A stretch of DNA of 63,968 bases, the filler included, from Cercozoa sp. M6MM (taxonomy: Eukaryota > Protista > Endomyxa: Ascetosporea): assembly GCA_040357565.1 (NCBI GenBank). It is 9 parts of 9 records of this genome, joined end to end, with 100 filler letters (N's around TTAATTAATTAA, not from the genome) between each part and the next. Parts side by side here need not be neighbours in the genome. Positions count along the whole stretch, not along the records: positions 55,763 to 60,796 come from JBDODJ010000989.1; positions 60,897 to 62,852 come from JBDODJ010001878.1; 7 more parts are not named here. One strand, given 5' to 3'. A program made the position numbers and the translations under genes. Each line of letters begins with the position of its first letter. Positions within the stretch are counted from its first letter, which is position 1. The notes under the pieces were generated by a model. That model was not told the origin of the DNA and searched no databases. It saw only the letters and a program-made list of their open reading frames with translations. Of this stretch, positions 55,663 to 61,042 are shown piece by piece.

Positions 55663-55763
55663 NNNNNNNNNNNNNNNNNNNNNNNNNNNNNNNNNNNNNN
55701 NNNNNNTTAATTAATTAANNNNNNNNNNNNNNNNNNNNNNNNNNNNNNNNNNNNNNNNNNNNA

Positions 55764-56351
55764 TGTTACAGCATAAACCACTGTATCCGCGCGGAAGCAA
55801 CCCAACAACTTAAAAAATCCTCAAAAAGAGGTGTGGAAGATTTTGACGTGTGTTCGCTGGTATCCTGACCTACTGAGAGCTTCAGTCCAGACTGTGGAAC
55901 ACCTGTGTTTGAGTAGGGAAGCCTTGAGCAAGCTTTTTGCAGCTGAACTCAAAGAAGGGCTCTCTCTCGACCAGGTAATCTGATCTCTCCAGGACCAGTT
56001 GTCTTCGCTTCTACCTGTCCTCTGCCTTTCCAGGGGCCCTTCTTTTCTTTACTTCCAACTCAAGTACTTCTGAATCCTCACTACTCAGTTCTCACGACGC
56101 CTTTCCGTCTCAAGGACCCTTTATACTGACTGTCCTTTCTACAGTTTCCATCTGACGGGTGACTGTCCCGTCCACCACAAGTGCTTTGCCGCCCAACTGA
56201 ACCGTTGGGGTAACTCACTCTTTCAAACTGACACTTGGCCACTCTTCCTCCAAGAACAGACTTTATTACGTTCCTTAGTTTTTTTGTATCACTGGCAAAG
56301 TACCCTTAGTTTACCAAGGCCTGATCCCTATCAGAGAGGGCTGCGGTAACA
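55764..56351 (+). repeat. LTR subfamily A (588 bp)
   Basis: TGTTAC...GTAACA inverted termini. The first 46 bp recur at 60751 and the full length recurs at 11601-12188. Confidence 0.95.
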
Positions 56352-56354
56352 TTT

Positions 56355-56371
56355 TGGTACGAGATCCGAGG
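56355..56371 (+). promoter_or_regulatory. Primer binding site, possibly tRNA-iMet-like
   Basis: TGGTACGAGATCCGAGG begins 3 nt after the LTR. TGGTA fits an A73 / A1:U72 tRNA, but the cognate tRNA is not verified. Confidence 0.6.
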
Positions 56372-56449
56372 AGGGGATCTGGCCAGTCTAGCGTCGCAAG
56401 ACAGCAACCTCGCGACACGCCTGTCGAAAAACAAAAAAGAAAAACCAAG

Positions 56450-59400
56450 ATGGCAGACTCGATTGACACCGACTCTGAAATCCCGCATCTTGAAGATTTC
56501 CGACAAACTGATACGAAACCCGACATCCTCGTGAGATGCCTAGATGCACTTCGACGTCGGCAAGACCAAGCCGACGAAAAGATCGCGCAAGTTTCCTCGC
56601 TAGCTGAGATAGTCAAAGACTTGCAGGCGACAACCGAAAAACAAAACACAGCGATTCACCAATTGCTGCTAAGCCAAACGCGTCTTGAACAACTTCTACG
56701 CAACCAAGAAGTGCCGATGGAGATAAGTGACTCTGACACGGTCACTACTGAAACCGGACTCCATCAAGCCGTCGTGCCAAGAACGAAGCTTGACCCTCTT
56801 CACTTTTCGACGAAACAATTGGTCACACGTTTCAAGACAAACTTCGCTGAATTGGAGCAAAAACTCCTCTCTAACCATTCGGTCGGAATTCAGTCGGCCC
56901 ATTTGAAAGCGCTCGATCTTTTGATGCGTGACGTTGGGGTCTTCACGATCAAGAACACCGATCTACCAATCGTCGAACTTGAAACGATGAAAAACTCTTT
57001 CTTGAAAAGCATCTCGATGAATTCTCTCGTTGCCCAGCTACCCATGAGCATCGTGGTGGAGAGATTTGCTACCAAGATCAAAGGACGTCTTGAAAGCATC
57101 GTCCGACTTTTCTTTTTCGAAAAGTCGCAACACGAGCGAACAGTGTCCGCACTTGTTGAGTATTTGCAACAGTCGATCGAAACTCAACTGTCGCATACAC
57201 TTGTTGCCGAAGCGCGTGACGCGTTGTGTAAACTGCGTTGCGGCTCCTTGGAAGATGCCAACGACTTCATTTTTCCGTTCATGGATCGTCTACAAGTATA
57301 TGCCGCAGTGTCTGACAGCATTCCTTCGGATGCCGAGGCTATTGCAATCTTGCGCGCGGCTCTCCCACCAACGTTGTTGCCTCTCTTTGATGAGAAGACG
57401 CTAGAGCACCGCCAAGATCACCCCGAACAACCACAAACGATCGGTTGGGCTCTTCATTACGCATTACGACGGGCACACTCCACATGGAAGCGTTCTTTTA
57501 CGACTCGCCAAGTTCACTCAAAGAAAGCCTCTGACTTTGCCCTAACTCGAACAAAGCGTTCCTTGAAGTCGCTCAACCAACTCACAGAACTCCCGCAACT
57601 GACAAAGAAACCGTGCCAGTGTTCAGTCTGTGGCACTCTGGGCCACACTTCTGACCAGTGTTGGACCGCCCATCCTGAACTTGCGCCCGTTCGTTTGCGC
57701 GAGTACTACTTGCAACAGAACAAGGAGTTGCAAGCATTTGTAGCGTCTAATCGGAAGACAAAGTCGAAATCGAAAGCTGGCTCGCCTTTCTCCAAACCAA
57801 CTGAAAAGGCAACAACTTCCTTGACTCTCCACTTCACGAAGGAAAGTGAAGAGACGAGCCTCCCATCTTTTGCTTTCGACGCGACCCTTGGTGACTCATC
57901 AACAAAGTTCCAATGCCTGTTCGACACCGGAGCACGCGTTGATCGCTTCGACTTGCTTCTCGAACGGGGAGCTTACCAAACACTTCGAAATCAAGGCGAA
58001 GTAAAACGCTTCAAGCGAATGTCCAAAGGTGACTTCGTGATTGTCGCAGGAGGCAATAAGATCTCTCGAAACCGCCTCCCGATCATTGGTGAAATCCAAT
58101 CGTCTCTGACTGTCAAAGATGACGACGGGCATACTTTAACCATCCCTTGTCGAGTGGCAGTCATTGAGCACCTGAATGCGCAGCAAGAAGCCATTGTCAC
58201 ACAATCTTTCATTGTCAAAAACAGTGTCACAATGCACTGTCTGAATATTGGCAGCTACTTTGAACTGAAGAAGTTCAACTTCAAACTTCCAATGGCAAAA
58301 CGTCGTCTGTACGACTCGAAGAAGCAGTCGTGCCACGCGTTTGCACTTTTGCCTGTGCTCACCGCCGCTTGTACTGCACCTGTGACCTTGCCCCCGAAAA
58401 ACGCTATGCGAGTGCCTTTTGAATTCAATGTCGATGCTCTCCCGAGCACAGTTTCGGCATTGACGTTGGATCTCGACTGCTCCGTTGGCTCGTCTTTGCT
58501 CAAGTTCGATATCAAGGACTCGATTTCCAAATTTTCCTTCCCGGTGTACAATGACACAACTGAAGTCGTTCGGCTGGCACCTGGAGATCCCATTGGACAA
58601 CTCGAGTGTTTCTTTTCGGAAGATCACGAACTGGTCTCCACGAGTGAAGTGTCGAACTCGGACAAGACCTCTTTCATCGACCCTGCCTTGGAGCACGCTT
58701 TTGCACTGTCACCGCTTCGAGACACGCTTCCGCCGTCTATTCGCGCACAGATCGAAAAAGACATGCAAGTTGCACACGACCTGTGTCTAAAAGACGAGTA
58801 CTGGGAAGACGACTATCAAGCAGGTCGTGAAGCTGTTGAACGAATTGAGATAGGGGACCACTTAAGCGAAAATGAAGCCCTCCAAGTGCGCTCTCTACTC
58901 CGACATTTCTCAGACGTGTTCTCTTCTCCAAGAACGATGCATGTGAAGCCTGTGAAAGTGAAAATGAAAGCTGACGCAATACCTGGCGTCACCACACCAC
59001 GATATCGTTCCCCCCATATGGAGAAGAAAGCTGAGGTTTTACCTCGCTTTGGAAGATACGAAACTGACAAATGTGCAGACTCAAAGACCACTTCTGACCC
59101 CGAGTTCCTTTTAACTCGCAGTGACACACACATTGACAACTGTGACAACTTTCTCGCGGACATCGCTGAGCCTGAACACCAAGAGATGTTTGAACTCCCT
59201 TCCGTGACGGAGTTCGCAAACAGTCAGAAGGAGGACCCTGCACTTCAAACTGTCTTCGAGTATCTCAAAAATCCCGAAGATGTTCCATTCAACAGAATCC
59301 CTGACCTCTTACGACCGCTTTTACACCGCTTTCTCACACAAGGAGAAGAAGAAGTGTTGCTCTTTCGAAACGACAACGAAAGGCTTGTTCGTGTTGTTCC

Positions 59401-60763
59401 TGAAGACCTTCAGTGGAGCGTGTTGCATTTCTTTCACGACTCCCCTTTTTCCGCCCATGTCGGAAATCCAAAGCTCATAGCGTCACTCGAGCAACGATTC
59501 TGGTGGCCCGGTCTTCGCAAGGACGCGCGAGAGTTCGTCAAGAGCTGCGTCACCTGTCAGCTCCAAAAAGCAGCATCCGCTCGCGGCGCCATTCCTCTGA
59601 AATCCTTCGTGGCCACGCGACCATTTCAAATCGTCGGCATTGACCTCGTTGGACCTCTTCCTCCTGACGAAGACGAGTACACTTGGGTCTTTGTGTGTAT
59701 CGACAAGTTTAGTCGCCTCGTCGAAACGGTTCCTATGAGATCGACTACTGCCGAAGACATGGCGAAAGCAACTGTCCCGATCTGGCTTCGGTATGGAATT
59801 CCTGATTCAGTTCTGTCCGATCGCGACCCTCGCTTTCTTTCGTTGCTCTTCGACGAAGTTCGGAAAGTGCTCCATGTGAAATCTTTGAGAACCACTGCGT
59901 ATCATCCACAGTGCAATGGCGTCACTGAACGCTTCAATCGCTTTCTCAGCACTGCACTGGCGATGCTCACTCGCCAATTCAAGGATGATGAAATGCAGCA
60001 TTGGTCGACTCTACTACCGCTTGTGACATTCGCCTACAATGCTACTCCGAACTTCGCCACGAAACTTGCCCCTTTCGAAATTGTCTTTGGTCGAAAGCCG
60101 CGATTTCCAACCGAAGAAACTACTGTCTTTCACCACAATAAACACCTCGCAGTGTCGGAATCTGCCGAAAGCTACCTTCGACACTTGAAGAAAAACCTTC
60201 GTCGACTCTTGAAAATGGCCGACGAAAATCAACGAAAATACGCAAAGACTTACGCAACTGACAAAATAGACGAAAAGCAACGTTATCTGTCTGGTGACAC
60301 GGTGCTTCGATCAATTGCGAAAGTCCCGGCTCCCGTTGATCGACCACGAGGCACGAAGAAGTTTCTCGCTCGTTGGGACGGTCCCTGGATCATCATCAAA
60401 CGACTTCCCAATGGTGTGAACTACCTGGTCACCAATGGCGAGCGAAAACGCGTGCTGAACGTCCGAGACATGAAACCTTACTTTGGCGAAGATGCCTCCC
60501 GCCTACGAAGATTGAACAGGCGAAAGACAGAAACAGCCACTGTCTCCGACGATGCATACCCTCGAATCATCGAAAAACGACTCCTCGCGGATTCTCCTCC
60601 TGAGTACAAGGTCCAGTTCGAGCCTGATGGCGACGCAACATGGTTGGCGCGCGAATACATCAGCCTGGACATGTTGAAAAAGTTCGAAAAACACGAAGCT
60701 TCGGCTCGCACGCGACGAGCACTGCGCCGTGCGACCTTGGAGGGGCGGGATGTTACAGCATAA
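56450..60763 (+). CDS. Gag-protease-dUTPase-like-integrase-chromodomain polyprotein (1437 aa, intronless, no RT/RH)
   Basis: CX2CX4HX4C at 57620-57661; LFDTGA at 57923; HHCC at 59435-59557; D..D-x35-E at 59642/59819/59927; GPY/F-type RWDGPW near 60375; chromodomain YPRIIEKR..EYKVQF..ATWL at ~60555-60690. Confidence 0.95.
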   Translation: MADSIDTDSEIPHLEDFRQTDTKPDILVRCLDALRRRQDQADEKIAQVSSLAEIVKDLQATTEKQNTAIHQLLLSQTRLEQLLRNQEVPMEISDSDTVTTETGLHQAVVPRTKLDPLHFSTKQLVTRFKTNFAELEQKLLSNHSVGIQSAHLKALDLLMRDVGVFTIKNTDLPIVELETMKNSFLKSISMNSLVAQLPMSIVVERFATKIKGRLESIVRLFFFEKSQHERTVSALVEYLQQSIETQLSHTLVAEARDALCKLRCGSLEDANDFIFPFMDRLQVYAAVSDSIPSDAEAIAILRAALPPTLLPLFDEKTLEHRQDHPEQPQTIGWALHYALRRAHSTWKRSFTTRQVHSKKASDFALTRTKRSLKSLNQLTELPQLTKKPCQCSVCGTLGHTSDQCWTAHPELAPVRLREYYLQQNKELQAFVASNRKTKSKSKAGSPFSKPTEKATTSLTLHFTKESEETSLPSFAFDATLGDSSTKFQCLFDTGARVDRFDLLLERGAYQTLRNQGEVKRFKRMSKGDFVIVAGGNKISRNRLPIIGEIQSSLTVKDDDGHTLTIPCRVAVIEHLNAQQEAIVTQSFIVKNSVTMHCLNIGSYFELKKFNFKLPMAKRRLYDSKKQSCHAFALLPVLTAACTAPVTLPPKNAMRVPFEFNVDALPSTVSALTLDLDCSVGSSLLKFDIKDSISKFSFPVYNDTTEVVRLAPGDPIGQLECFFSEDHELVSTSEVSNSDKTSFIDPALEHAFALSPLRDTLPPSIRAQIEKDMQVAHDLCLKDEYWEDDYQAGREAVERIEIGDHLSENEALQVRSLLRHFSDVFSSPRTMHVKPVKVKMKADAIPGVTTPRYRSPHMEKKAEVLPRFGRYETDKCADSKTTSDPEFLLTRSDTHIDNCDNFLADIAEPEHQEMFELPSVTEFANSQKEDPALQTVFEYLKNPEDVPFNRIPDLLRPLLHRFLTQGEEEVLLFRNDNERLVRVVPEDLQWSVLHFFHDSPFSAHVGNPKLIASLEQRFWWPGLRKDAREFVKSCVTCQLQKAASARGAIPLKSFVATRPFQIVGIDLVGPLPPDEDEYTWVFVCIDKFSRLVETVPMRSTTAEDMAKATVPIWLRYGIPDSVLSDRDPRFLSLLFDEVRKVLHVKSLRTTAYHPQCNGVTERFNRFLSTALAMLTRQFKDDEMQHWSTLLPLVTFAYNATPNFATKLAPFEIVFGRKPRFPTEETTVFHHNKHLAVSESAESYLRHLKKNLRRLLKMADENQRKYAKTYATDKIDEKQRYLSGDTVLRSIAKVPAPVDRPRGTKKFLARWDGPWIIIKRLPNGVNYLVTNGERKRVLNVRDMKPYFGEDASRLRRLNRRKTETATVSDDAYPRIIEKRLLADSPPEYKVQFEPDGDATWLAREYISLDMLKKFEKHEASARTRRALRRATLEGRDVTA
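60739..60750 (+). promoter_or_regulatory. Polypurine tract
   Basis: GGAGGGGCGGGA directly precedes the TGTTACA of the 3' LTR. Confidence 0.85.
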
Positions 60764-61042
60764 ACCACTGTATCCGCGCGGAAGCAACCCAACAACNNNN
60801 NNNNNNNNNNNNNNNNNNNNNNNNNNNNNNNNNNNNNNNNTTAATTAATTAANNNNNNNNNNNNNNNNNNNNNNNNNNNNNNNNNNNNNNNNNNNNCCCA
60901 CCGACTATCCCCACCGTACCCCACCCTGCCTTACCCCCCAGAGGGGTGCGGGGGGGATCGTCGGTGGGGGTTGAAAGGGGGGGGGGGAGTAAGGTGGGGG
61001 AAAGTGAGGTAGGGTGGGAGGAAGGTGGGGGGTAAGACCCAC

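What the first reader, a model, noticed from the sequence alone, without database searches (positions are those of the whole stretch)
55764..60796. RT-less LTR retroelement that keeps Gag, protease, integrase and chromodomain in one intact ORF
Seen: the LTR, PBS, PPT and an uninterrupted 1437-aa ORF with CCHC, DTG, HHCC, D-D35-E, GPY/F and chromodomain motifs. There is no YxDD, no RxCxDYR and no TDAS. The usual pre-RT linker (LLRHFSDVFS..PRYRSPHMEKK) runs at ~59030 straight into AEVLPR, which resembles the ADALSR that closes RNase H, and then into the pre-integrase SQKEDPAL. Known: Ty3/gypsy pol order is PR-RT-RH-IN, and most non-autonomous LTR elements (TRIM, LARD, TR-GAG) lose most or all coding capacity. 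Inference: a precise in-frame loss of RT+RH with everything else intact points to a semi-autonomous element that makes its own particle and targeting integrase and takes RT from a helper.
Basis: partly seen in the sequence, partly recalled or inferred. Interest (0 to 1): 0.88.

Follow-up and report, generated by a model that had tools for sequence, protein, structure and literature searches.

The report
RT-deleted LTR retrotransposon in an amoeba
This is a young, low-copy copy of a divergent Ty3/gypsy-type retrotransposon in the marine amoeba Lemnamoeba sinaloensis that has lost reverse transcriptase and RNase H by an in-frame internal deletion: a real but fairly ordinary kind of defective element, with no evidence yet that it spreads using a helper.

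Summary
The piece is a 4987-nt loop (identical 47-nt ends, an assembly overlap). It holds one LTR (55764-56351), a candidate PBS, a PPT and one 1437-aa ORF (56450-60763).

What the ORF contains:
- Pfam finds only the integrase zinc-binding and core domains.
- A profile of ten full-length relatives matches the RT lead-in (aa 796-842) and the integrase (aa 909-1344). Its roughly 430 RT/RNase H positions have no counterpart in any frame.
- CCHC, DTGA, HHCC, D-D35-E and GPW are present. A C-terminal three-strand-plus-helix fold supports a chromodomain-like tail, but only weakly.

The junction (~59042) is real: an unbranched 306-nt contig from raw reads crosses it at the same depth as its flanks.

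The host is Cercozoa sp. M6MM (Lemnamoeba sinaloensis).

The "semi-autonomous, helper-dependent family" reading is not shown:
- The internal part appears to be present in about one to a few copies.
- A roughly 5% diverged variant carries frameshifts.
- No close RT-bearing partner was found. The only relative has 31-35% identity.
- The LTR alone is about 300-fold more abundant, which suggests hundreds of solo LTRs.

Best reading: a recent in-frame deletion derivative, comparable to mouse IAP 1-delta-1. Interest is modest.

The parts
55763..55809 (+). 47-nt stretch identical to 60750-60796. It is the overlap of a loop-shaped assembly edge (last PPT base plus the first 46 nt of the LTR), not a biological terminal repeat.
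   Evidence: D1, 100% identity, spacing 4987. The M6MM short-read genome was assembled with Supernova; that its graph uses K=48, giving K-1=47, is my own knowledge.
55764..56351 (+). LTR, 588 nt, with termini TGTTAC...GTAACA (TG..CA and a 6-nt inverted repeat).
   Evidence: In run X1 the summed depth is 196,000-338,000 up to about 56351 and about 900 after it, and many contigs run off into unlike sequence exactly at 56351/56352.
56355..56371 (+). Candidate primer binding site starting with TGG, 3 nt after the LTR.
   Evidence: Sequence. Not checked against host tRNAs; no tRNA gene lies in the piece.
56450..60763 (+). Single 1437-aa ORF (Gag-like, protease-like, unassigned middle region, RT lead-in, RNase H tail, integrase, chromo-like tail). 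Its stop codon lies 11-13 nt inside the next LTR.
57620..57661 (+). CCHC zinc knuckle (aa 391-404) at the end of the Gag-like part.
   Evidence: It is conserved in P0121 and is the segment matched by P0123-P0131. Language-model neighbours carry Retrotrans_gag/zf-CCHC (a lead only).
57887..58249 (+). Probable retropepsin-type protease, with DTGA at aa 492-495 (nt 57923-57934).
   Evidence: Motif. LFDTGA/LYDTGA is conserved with P0121. The nearest named Atlas clusters carry Asp_protease_2/RVP_2 (a lead). There is no Pfam hit, and the AlphaFold model was unusable.
58250..58834 (+). Unassigned region of about 200 aa between protease and RT lead-in. It is conserved with P0121 (for example the CHAF.LLPV and CFF.EDHEL blocks).
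   Evidence: No Pfam family. Atlas neighbours are unnamed. Model pLDDT 31.
58835..59041 (+). Retained lead-in and first helix of reverse transcriptase (aa 796-864, ending ...RYRSPHMEKKAEVL).
   Evidence: Profile HMM 209-257 matches aa 796-842. The alignment with P0121 runs to aa 864, after which P0121 continues with an RT-type N-terminus.
59036..59047 (+). Deletion junction: about 430 residues of RT plus RNase H are missing here, and the frame is kept.
   Evidence: X1 contig of 306 nt lies on 58821-59126 with 0 mismatches at depth 1036 and is unbranched across the junction.
59042..59089 (+). Remnant of the last strand and tail of RNase H (PRFGRYETDKCADSKT). It aligns with FKSGRKHSDADCLSR of P0013, just after that protein's RT_RNaseH domain.
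59396..59572 (+). Integrase zinc-binding domain (HHCC: H996, H1003, C1033, C1036).
   Evidence: Pfam PF17921, E 7e-18. Invariant columns.
59615..59908 (+). Integrase catalytic core with D1065, D1124 and E1160 (D-D35-E intact).
   Evidence: Pfam PF00665, E 3e-8. Invariant columns. The model matches PFV and Ty3 integrases, E about 1e-19.
60299..60478 (+). Integrase C-terminal SH3-like module with the GPW (GPY/F) motif at aa 1311-1313.
   Evidence: G403/P404 are invariant in the alignment. Beta strands at model residues 376-435. Alignment with P0013 and P0058.
60563..60739 (+). Chromodomain-like C-terminal tail (aa 1372-1430): three strands followed by a long helix.
   Evidence: Model E464-471, E474-481, E488-492, H498-522 at pLDDT about 83-91. 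One BLASTP segment runs into the Pfam-verified Chromo domain of P0058. A profile of 7 chromodomains scores 3.7 bits against a maximum of 2.8 in 300 shuffles. Pfam Chromo is not detected; Chromo_PTM E 0.15.
60739..60750 (+). Polypurine tract GGAGGGGCGGGA directly before the LTR start TG (60751).

Best explanation
The piece is an internally deleted, non-autonomous copy of a very divergent Ty3/gypsy-type (chromovirus-like) LTR retrotransposon of the marine amoeba Lemnamoeba sinaloensis (strain M6MM; Rhizaria).

Shown:
- About 430 residues covering reverse transcriptase and RNase H are missing.
- The deletion joins the first helix of RT in frame to the last ~16 residues of RNase H.
- Gag-like, protease-like, integrase (all catalytic residues present) and a chromo-like tail remain in one 1437-aa ORF.
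- The junction exists in the raw data.

Inferred:
- The copy is young and low-copy, so its ORF is intact because too little time has passed for decay. The frame was kept by chance (1 in 3).
- The deletion arose either by template switching during reverse transcription of a full-length parent or by a deletion in the integrated copy.
- It cannot copy itself. If it moves at all, it needs RT/RNase H supplied in trans.
- The family once was active and left several hundred solo LTRs.
For: RT/RH absence in all frames, with both flanks of the missing segment retained in the right order.

Junction: bridged by an unbranched 306-nt contig built independently from reads, at the depth of its flanks.

Integrase: intact by sequence and fold.

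Host identification: 97%-identical and 31-35%-identical proteins come from Cercozoa sp. M6MM, and the 47-nt overlap fits the assembler used.

Low copy number: internal contigs have depth 700-1036, the same order as single LTR-variant contigs (about 430-900 each).

A diverged variant decays neutrally: a 2-nt deletion, a 5-nt insertion, and 5 nonsynonymous against 3 synonymous changes.

LTR abundance: summed LTR depth is 196,000-338,000 and drops exactly at the LTR end.

No close RT-bearing partner found anywhere searched.
Against: - The single-copy depth of run X1 was not measured, so the copy number is an inference.
- A second M6MM contig with a 97%-identical gag fragment is 5090 nt long, close to this 5034-nt loop. 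If it is a second RT-less loop, the deletion predates a 3-5% divergence, and this copy's intact ORF would then call for selection.
- No near-identical full-length parent is present at comparable depth. That is unexpected if the deletion arose during a recent round of reverse transcription.
- All integrase catalytic residues are kept.
Confidence: 0.6

Rival explanations
1. One reading: a maintained semi-autonomous family. It makes its own Gag, protease and targeting integrase, is kept intact by selection, and is reverse-transcribed by the RT of a helper element.
For: - Intact 1437-aa ORF with a complete HHCC and D-D35-E integrase.
- No comparably abundant near-identical full-length copy in the reads.
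- A second contig of similar length (5090 nt) with 97%-identical gag.
- A precedent exists: mouse IAP 1-delta-1 elements have an in-frame deletion and a fusion protein that helps their own mobilisation in trans (PMC6466679).
Against: - Internal depth is of the order of single LTR variants, so few copies.
- The variant copy is frameshifted and shows no excess of synonymous change.
- The only relative with an RT start, P0121, is 31-35% identical. RT normally enters particles as a Gag-Pol fusion (established knowledge of retroelements), so co-assembly with so distant a Gag is doubtful.
- No element sharing the PBS region is abundant: the contig starting at 56364 has depth 897.
Confidence: 0.2
2. 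The RT-less form is a retro-copy of a spliced or otherwise processed sub-genomic RNA of a full-length element. The host is intron-rich (about 10 introns per mRNA).
For: The loss is clean and in frame, and the host has many introns.
Against: No parent sequence is available to show GT..AG at the borders. No full-length parent sharing the flanks is seen in X1. The junction has no recognisable exon-exon signature.
Confidence: 0.05
3. A domesticated host gene derived from Gag-protease-integrase, no longer a mobile element.
For: Long intact ORF at low copy number, with the integrase residues kept.
Against: It still sits between an LTR with TG..CA ends, a TGG site 3 nt after it and a polypurine tract abutting the next LTR, and the stop codon lies inside the LTR. 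It was not annotated as a gene in M6MM. No orthologues were found in other organisms.
Confidence: 0.05
4. Assembly artefact: the loop contig skipped RT/RH when a repeat graph was simplified.
For: The piece is a loop edge through a heavily repeated LTR.
Against: An independently built 306-nt contig of run X1 covers 58821-59126 without mismatch or branch, at depth 1036, like its neighbours at 968 and 803.
Confidence: 0.03
5. An RT is present but too divergent to detect.
For: Gag, protease and the middle region of this lineage escape Pfam entirely.
Against: Only 66 residues lie between the RT lead-in (aa 842) and the start of the integrase match (aa 909), and 16 of them align with the RNase H tail. 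The ~200-aa unassigned region lies before the RT lead-in, and relative P0121 has it too and then starts a normal RT. Reverse-strand ORFs are at most 186 aa.
Confidence: 0.02

Closest known systems
Ty3/gypsy (Metaviridae) LTR retrotransposons of the chromovirus type, such as Ty3
   Same: LTR with TG..CA ends, a PBS-like site and a PPT. The order is Gag (CCHC), protease (DTG), RT lead-in, RNase H tail, integrase (HHCC, D-D35-E, GPY/F-type module), then a chromo-like tail. The integrase model matches Ty3 integrase (7q5b) and PFV integrase. The best sequence relatives are Ty3/gypsy polyproteins at 25-35% identity.
   Different: No RT and no RNase H. Gag, protease and a ~200-aa region before RT are so divergent that Pfam finds nothing. 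The chromodomain is below Pfam detection.
Mouse IAP 1-delta-1 deletion subtype
   Same: An internal deletion leaves one ORF encoding an in-frame fusion polyprotein. The element is non-autonomous and depends on proteins supplied in trans (PMC6466679).
   Different: IAP 1-delta-1 loses part of gag and pol, is abundant, and is shown experimentally to be mobilised. Here RT and RNase H are lost, the copy number seems low, and no mobilisation or helper is shown.
Semi-autonomous plant elements that keep gag only (TR-GAG, RLG_Quinta, RLG_Sabrina)
   Same: LTR elements with partial coding capacity that must borrow enzymes (PMC11302176; PMC13570524).
   Different: Those keep Gag (sometimes protease) and lack both RT and integrase. 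They form large families with an identified partner sharing LTR ends and PBS. This element keeps protease and integrase, and no partner is known.
LARD and TRIM non-autonomous LTR elements
   Same: LTR, PBS and PPT without a working RT.
   Different: LARD and TRIM have no coding capacity. This one has a 4.3-kb intact ORF.
P0121 (MES1917231.1, Cercozoa sp. M6MM), a partial polyprotein in the same genome
   Same: The same peculiar layout of CCHC, DTGA, unassigned middle region and RT lead-in, with 31-35% identity over aa 366-864.
   Different: P0121 continues into a normal RT N-terminus where this element jumps to the RNase H tail. It is a fragment on a 2922-nt contig, so whether it is a full element is unknown.

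Membership tests
Ty3/gypsy LTR retrotransposon (Metaviridae) | Long terminal repeats with TG..CA ends flanking the internal region | tested here: inconclusive
   One LTR (55764-56351, TGTTAC..GTAACA) plus 46 nt of the next. The contig is a collapsed loop, so two separate LTRs and target-site duplications cannot be seen. The LTR 3' end is confirmed by the depth drop and loose ends at 56351/56352.
Ty3/gypsy LTR retrotransposon (Metaviridae) | Primer binding site after the 5' LTR and polypurine tract before the 3' LTR | tested here: inconclusive
   TGG-starting site 3 nt after the LTR, and GGAGGGGCGGGA abutting the LTR start. Complementarity to a host tRNA could not be tested.
Ty3/gypsy LTR retrotransposon (Metaviridae) | Reverse transcriptase (RVT_1, YxDD) and RNase H | tested here: not met
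   No Pfam hit, no YxDD or TDAS, and no match to the RT/RH part of a profile of 10 relatives in six frames. Only the RT lead-in and a 16-aa RNase H tail remain.
Ty3/gypsy LTR retrotransposon (Metaviridae) | Integrase with HHCC and D-D35-E, placed after RT/RH | tested here: met
   PF17921 E 7e-18 and PF00665 E 3e-8. Catalytic residues fall on invariant columns. The fold matches PFV and Ty3 integrases. It lies downstream of the RT/RH remnants.
Ty3/gypsy LTR retrotransposon (Metaviridae) | Gag with CCHC knuckle and retropepsin with D(T/S)G | tested here: inconclusive
   Both motifs are present and conserved with P0121, and language-model neighbours are gag/aspartic protease clusters. There is no Pfam hit and the model was unusable.
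Chromovirus branch of Ty3/gypsy | Chromodomain at the integrase C-terminus | tested here: inconclusive
   Pfam Chromo not detected. A weak profile score beats 300 shuffles. The alignment runs into the Chromo domain of P0058. The model gives three strands plus a helix at pLDDT about 83-91. The W of the usual KWKG is replaced (VQFEP).
TR-GAG / gag-only semi-autonomous LTR elements | Gag ORF only; no enzymes | tested here: not met
   The integrase is complete and a protease motif is present.
LARD / TRIM | No protein-coding capacity | tested here: not met
   1437-aa ORF.
Trans-mobilised in-frame deletion derivative (IAP 1-delta-1 type) | Internal deletion giving an in-frame fusion ORF | tested here: met
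Trans-mobilised in-frame deletion derivative (IAP 1-delta-1 type) | Amplification after the deletion, using a helper of the same family | tested here: inconclusive
   Depth suggests one to a few copies. A second contig of similar length has 97%-identical gag. No close helper was found. Flanks and a copy count would need the long-read assembly.

The most novel reading that the evidence does not exclude
The RT-less form is a selected, self-sustaining semi-autonomous lineage. On this reading it is the only internal-sequence-bearing survivor of a family that left hundreds of solo LTRs in a compact 27-Mb rhizarian genome. It would provide its own capsid, protease and chromatin-targeting integrase while using the reverse transcriptase of a distantly related element.
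Probability: 0.12. Interest if true: 0.6.

Novelty: new member of a known kind. Interest (0 to 1): 0.3.

Why it matters
Deletion derivatives of LTR retrotransposons are common, so the finding is mainly a clean, well-delimited example. It does document a very divergent Ty3/gypsy lineage in Rhizaria, a supergroup with few studied transposable elements. It also documents an element that keeps integrase while losing only RT and RNase H, a rarer pattern than gag-only elements. If several RT-less copies under selection were found in the published long-read assembly, this would be a test case for which retroelement proteins must act in cis and which can be borrowed. The roughly 300-fold excess of LTR over internal sequence also says something about solo-LTR formation in a compact protist genome.

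Tried and rejected
- Close relatives in IMG/VR viral contigs: none.
- JGI metagenome contigs by protein: none. By an exact LTR-end/PBS pattern: none.
- Protein searches. The whole ORF and the integrase part gave only relatives of 36% identity or less, covering the integrase. The Gag-protease-middle part gave nothing among long proteins. Among 1.84 billion representatives it gave only P0121, P0122 and zinc-knuckle hits.
- Pfam on five sub-segments at E up to 10: nothing meaningful for Gag, protease, the middle region or the junction.
- AlphaFold of aa 470-870 with a two-sequence alignment: pLDDT 31, so not used for fold search.
- Atlas search of the middle region: only unnamed clusters.
- Rfam: only sub-threshold chance matches.
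- tRNA genes: none.
- Tandem repeats: trivial.
- The dUTPase-like idea for the region after the protease: not supported by any tool.
- Only one read-laying run was allowed, so the single-copy depth of X1 and the hidden rows of joints and loose ends could not be checked.
- No RNA run held the sequence, so expression is unknown.
Full report
**What the piece is physically.** The piece 55763-60796 is 5034 nt, and its first and last 47 nt are identical. The unit is therefore 4987 nt closed on itself. Proteins 97% and 31-35% identical to parts of its ORF come from the genome of Cercozoa sp. M6MM. This is a marine amoeba isolated from fish gills, now described as Lemnamoeba sinaloensis. Its genome is about 24-27 Mb, apparently haploid, with about 10% repeats (PMC11069148; PMC13746701). 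Its short-read genome was assembled with Supernova. From my own knowledge, that assembler's graph uses K=48, which would give 47-nt overlaps. The "circle" is thus most simply a loop edge in which the two LTRs of an integrated element collapsed. It follows that the piece shows one LTR plus 46 nt of the next, and no flanks or target-site duplications.

**Anatomy.**
- The LTR runs 55764-56351, with TGTTAC at its start and GTAACA at its end.
- Three bases later a TGG-starting site could be the PBS.
- A purine tract (60739-60750) directly precedes the next LTR start.
- One ORF runs from ATG 56450 to TAA 60761-60763, 1437 aa. The stop lies inside the LTR.
- Motif scan: CCHC at aa 391-404, DTGA at aa 492-495, HHCC at 996/1003/1033/1036, GPW at aa 1311. 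There is no YxDD, TDAS or ADALSR.

**Is RT really missing?** Yes.
- Pfam on the whole ORF finds only Integrase_H2C2 (E 7e-18) and rve (E 3e-8). Five sub-segments at E up to 10 add nothing relevant.
- I built a profile from ten full-length relatives that all carry RVT_1 and RNase H, and searched the ORF and all six frames. Profile positions 209-257 match aa 796-842 and positions 687-1115 match aa 909-1344. Positions 258-686 have no counterpart anywhere.
- In one member, P0013, RVT_1 is at 373-532 and the RNase H domains at 596-724. That is exactly the segment skipped in the pairwise alignment: P0013 residues 279-317 align with aa 797-835, and residue 728 onward aligns with aa 863 onward.
- Only 66 residues separate the two matched blocks, so there is no room for a hidden polymerase.

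**Where the junction lies.**
- The same-genome relative P0121 aligns from the zinc knuckle to aa 864. Where this ORF reads ...HMEKKAEVL, P0121 reads ...AVEAKADEL and continues with a normal RT N-terminus.
- After AEVL, this ORF reads PRFGRYETDKCADSKT. That aligns with the FKSGRKHSDADCLSR tail which follows the RNase H domain of P0013.
- The break is therefore at about nt 59042, not about 59030.

**Is the junction an artefact?** No. Run X1 is the only strong holder of the sequence (81% of sampled words). It sits in the same study as two other organisms, which fits the Ascetosporea/M6MM project. In X1 a 306-nt contig lies on 58821-59126 without mismatch at depth 1036. Its neighbours have depths 968 and 803. 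Because that contig is unbranched across the junction, no comparably abundant copy shares the left flank and continues into RT. Rare variants can be dropped from such contigs, so a rare parent is not excluded.

**The rest of the ORF.**
- An alignment with 24 integrases puts H996, H1003, C1033, C1036, D1065, D1124, E1160 and the GP of the GPY/F module on invariant columns.
- The AlphaFold model of aa 909-1437 has mean pLDDT 74.6. It matches prototype foamy virus and Ty3 integrases at E about 1e-19.
- The last 60 residues fold as three strands and a long helix at pLDDT about 83-91.
- One BLASTP segment runs from the integrase into the Pfam-verified Chromo domain of P0058.
- A small chromodomain profile scores 3.7 bits, above all 300 shuffles (maximum 2.8) but weak. 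Pfam Chromo is not detected. I call this tail chromodomain-like, not proven.
- Gag and protease rest on three things: motifs conserved with P0121, position in the polyprotein, and language-model neighbours that carry gag and aspartic-protease families (a lead only).
- A conserved region of about 200 aa between the protease and the RT lead-in has no assignment. Its model was unusable.

**Copy number and family history (inference).**
- Internal contigs in X1 have depths of 700-1036.
- Individual LTR-variant contigs have about 430-900 each. The single-copy depth of X1 was not measured, so the copy number below is an inference.
- The internal part therefore seems to be present in one to a few copies.
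- A second variant appears in places, at depth 428 of 1312 near 57560-57685 and 530 of 1241 at 60604. It differs by about 5%. It has a 2-nt deletion and a 5-nt insertion, and 5 nonsynonymous against 3 synonymous changes. That is neutral decay.
- The window itself differs from all X1 contigs at three bases, two of them synonymous.
- By contrast, summed depth over the LTR is 196,000-338,000. It falls to about 900 exactly at the LTR end, where many contigs run on into unlike sequences.
- This points to several hundred LTR copies, mostly solo LTRs or LTRs with other neighbours, many with internal deletions.
- No abundant element shares the region just after the LTR: the contig starting at 56364 has depth 897.

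**Search for a helper or parent.**
- No protein above 36% identity to the integrase exists among 5.8 billion clusters.
- No long protein shares the Gag-protease-middle part.
- Among 1.84 billion representatives, only P0121 and the gag fragment P0122 are related.
- Viral and metagenome contig collections gave nothing.
- P0121 shows that a sister lineage in the same genome does go on into RT. It is only 31-35% identical, and it is a fragment.
- P0122 lies on a 5090-nt contig, close to this piece's 5034 nt. That may mean a second RT-less loop.

**Interpretation.** The loss of RT and RNase H with everything else in frame is real. The simplest account is a recent deletion derivative, with the frame kept by chance (1 in 3) and the ORF intact through youth. 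The deletion would have arisen either by template switching during reverse transcription or by deletion in the integrated copy. The element is non-autonomous. It also resembles the gag-only partners of plant elements (PMC11302176; PMC13570524). Here, however, there is no evidence of amplification after the deletion, no sign of selection in the one variant seen, and no plausible helper. RT normally enters particles as a Gag-Pol fusion (established retroelement biology). A helper with a Gag only about a third identical is therefore an unlikely donor. I give the deletion-derivative reading 0.6 and the semi-autonomous reading 0.2.

**Unexplained.** An imperfect 29-nt direct repeat (21 of 29 matches; 58959-58987 and 59019-59047) has its second copy exactly on the junction. 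It is the only such pair within 150 nt in the piece, and it arose in 1 of 30 shuffles. P0121 shows that the left half of the second copy is ancestral RT sequence. The repeat may reflect microhomology used in the deletion, or chance.

**Limits.**
- Only one read-laying run was available, and it used contigs, not raw reads.
- No RNA run was found.

Noticed in passing
window 55764-56351: In run X1 the LTR has a summed depth of 196,000-338,000, against about 900 for the internal region. There are dozens of variants, many with internal deletions of 57-270 nt, and many different continuations after 56351/56352. This suggests several hundred solo or otherwise-flanked LTRs in a genome of about 27 Mb.
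   Followed up: partly
window 58959-58987 and 59019-59047: An imperfect 29-nt direct repeat (21/29 matches, spacing 60) whose second copy lies on the RT/RNase H deletion junction. It is unique in the piece at that quality and seen in 1 of 30 shuffles. No mechanism is established.
   Followed up: partly
window 58250-58834 (aa ~600-795): A region of about 200 aa between the protease motif and the RT lead-in. It is conserved with the same-genome relative P0121 but has no Pfam family, no informative Atlas neighbour and an unusable model. Its function is unknown.
   Followed up: partly
window 57508, 58058, 60130: At these three bases every X1 contig differs from the window (C>T synonymous, A>G giving K537E, T>C synonymous). 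The window sequence is therefore not exactly the dominant sequence of that run; it may be another library, another copy or assembler error.
   Followed up: partly
window 57560-57685 and 60604: A second, roughly 5% diverged variant of the internal region in X1, with a 2-nt deletion at 57622 and a TAAGT insertion after 60604, both frameshifting. This is a decaying sister copy.
   Followed up: partly
window 56966-57116, 57445-57595, 59060-59254, 56067-56256: Short contigs from a marine and an aquatic metagenome (runs X2, X3; depth about 2-3) match these stretches with 0-1 mismatches. The amoeba or a very close relative occurs in environmental samples.
   Followed up: no
window 56427-56448: An A-rich tract (AAAAACA x3) lies directly before the ATG of the ORF. 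The reading frame is open upstream as far as a TAG at 56276, inside the LTR.
   Followed up: no
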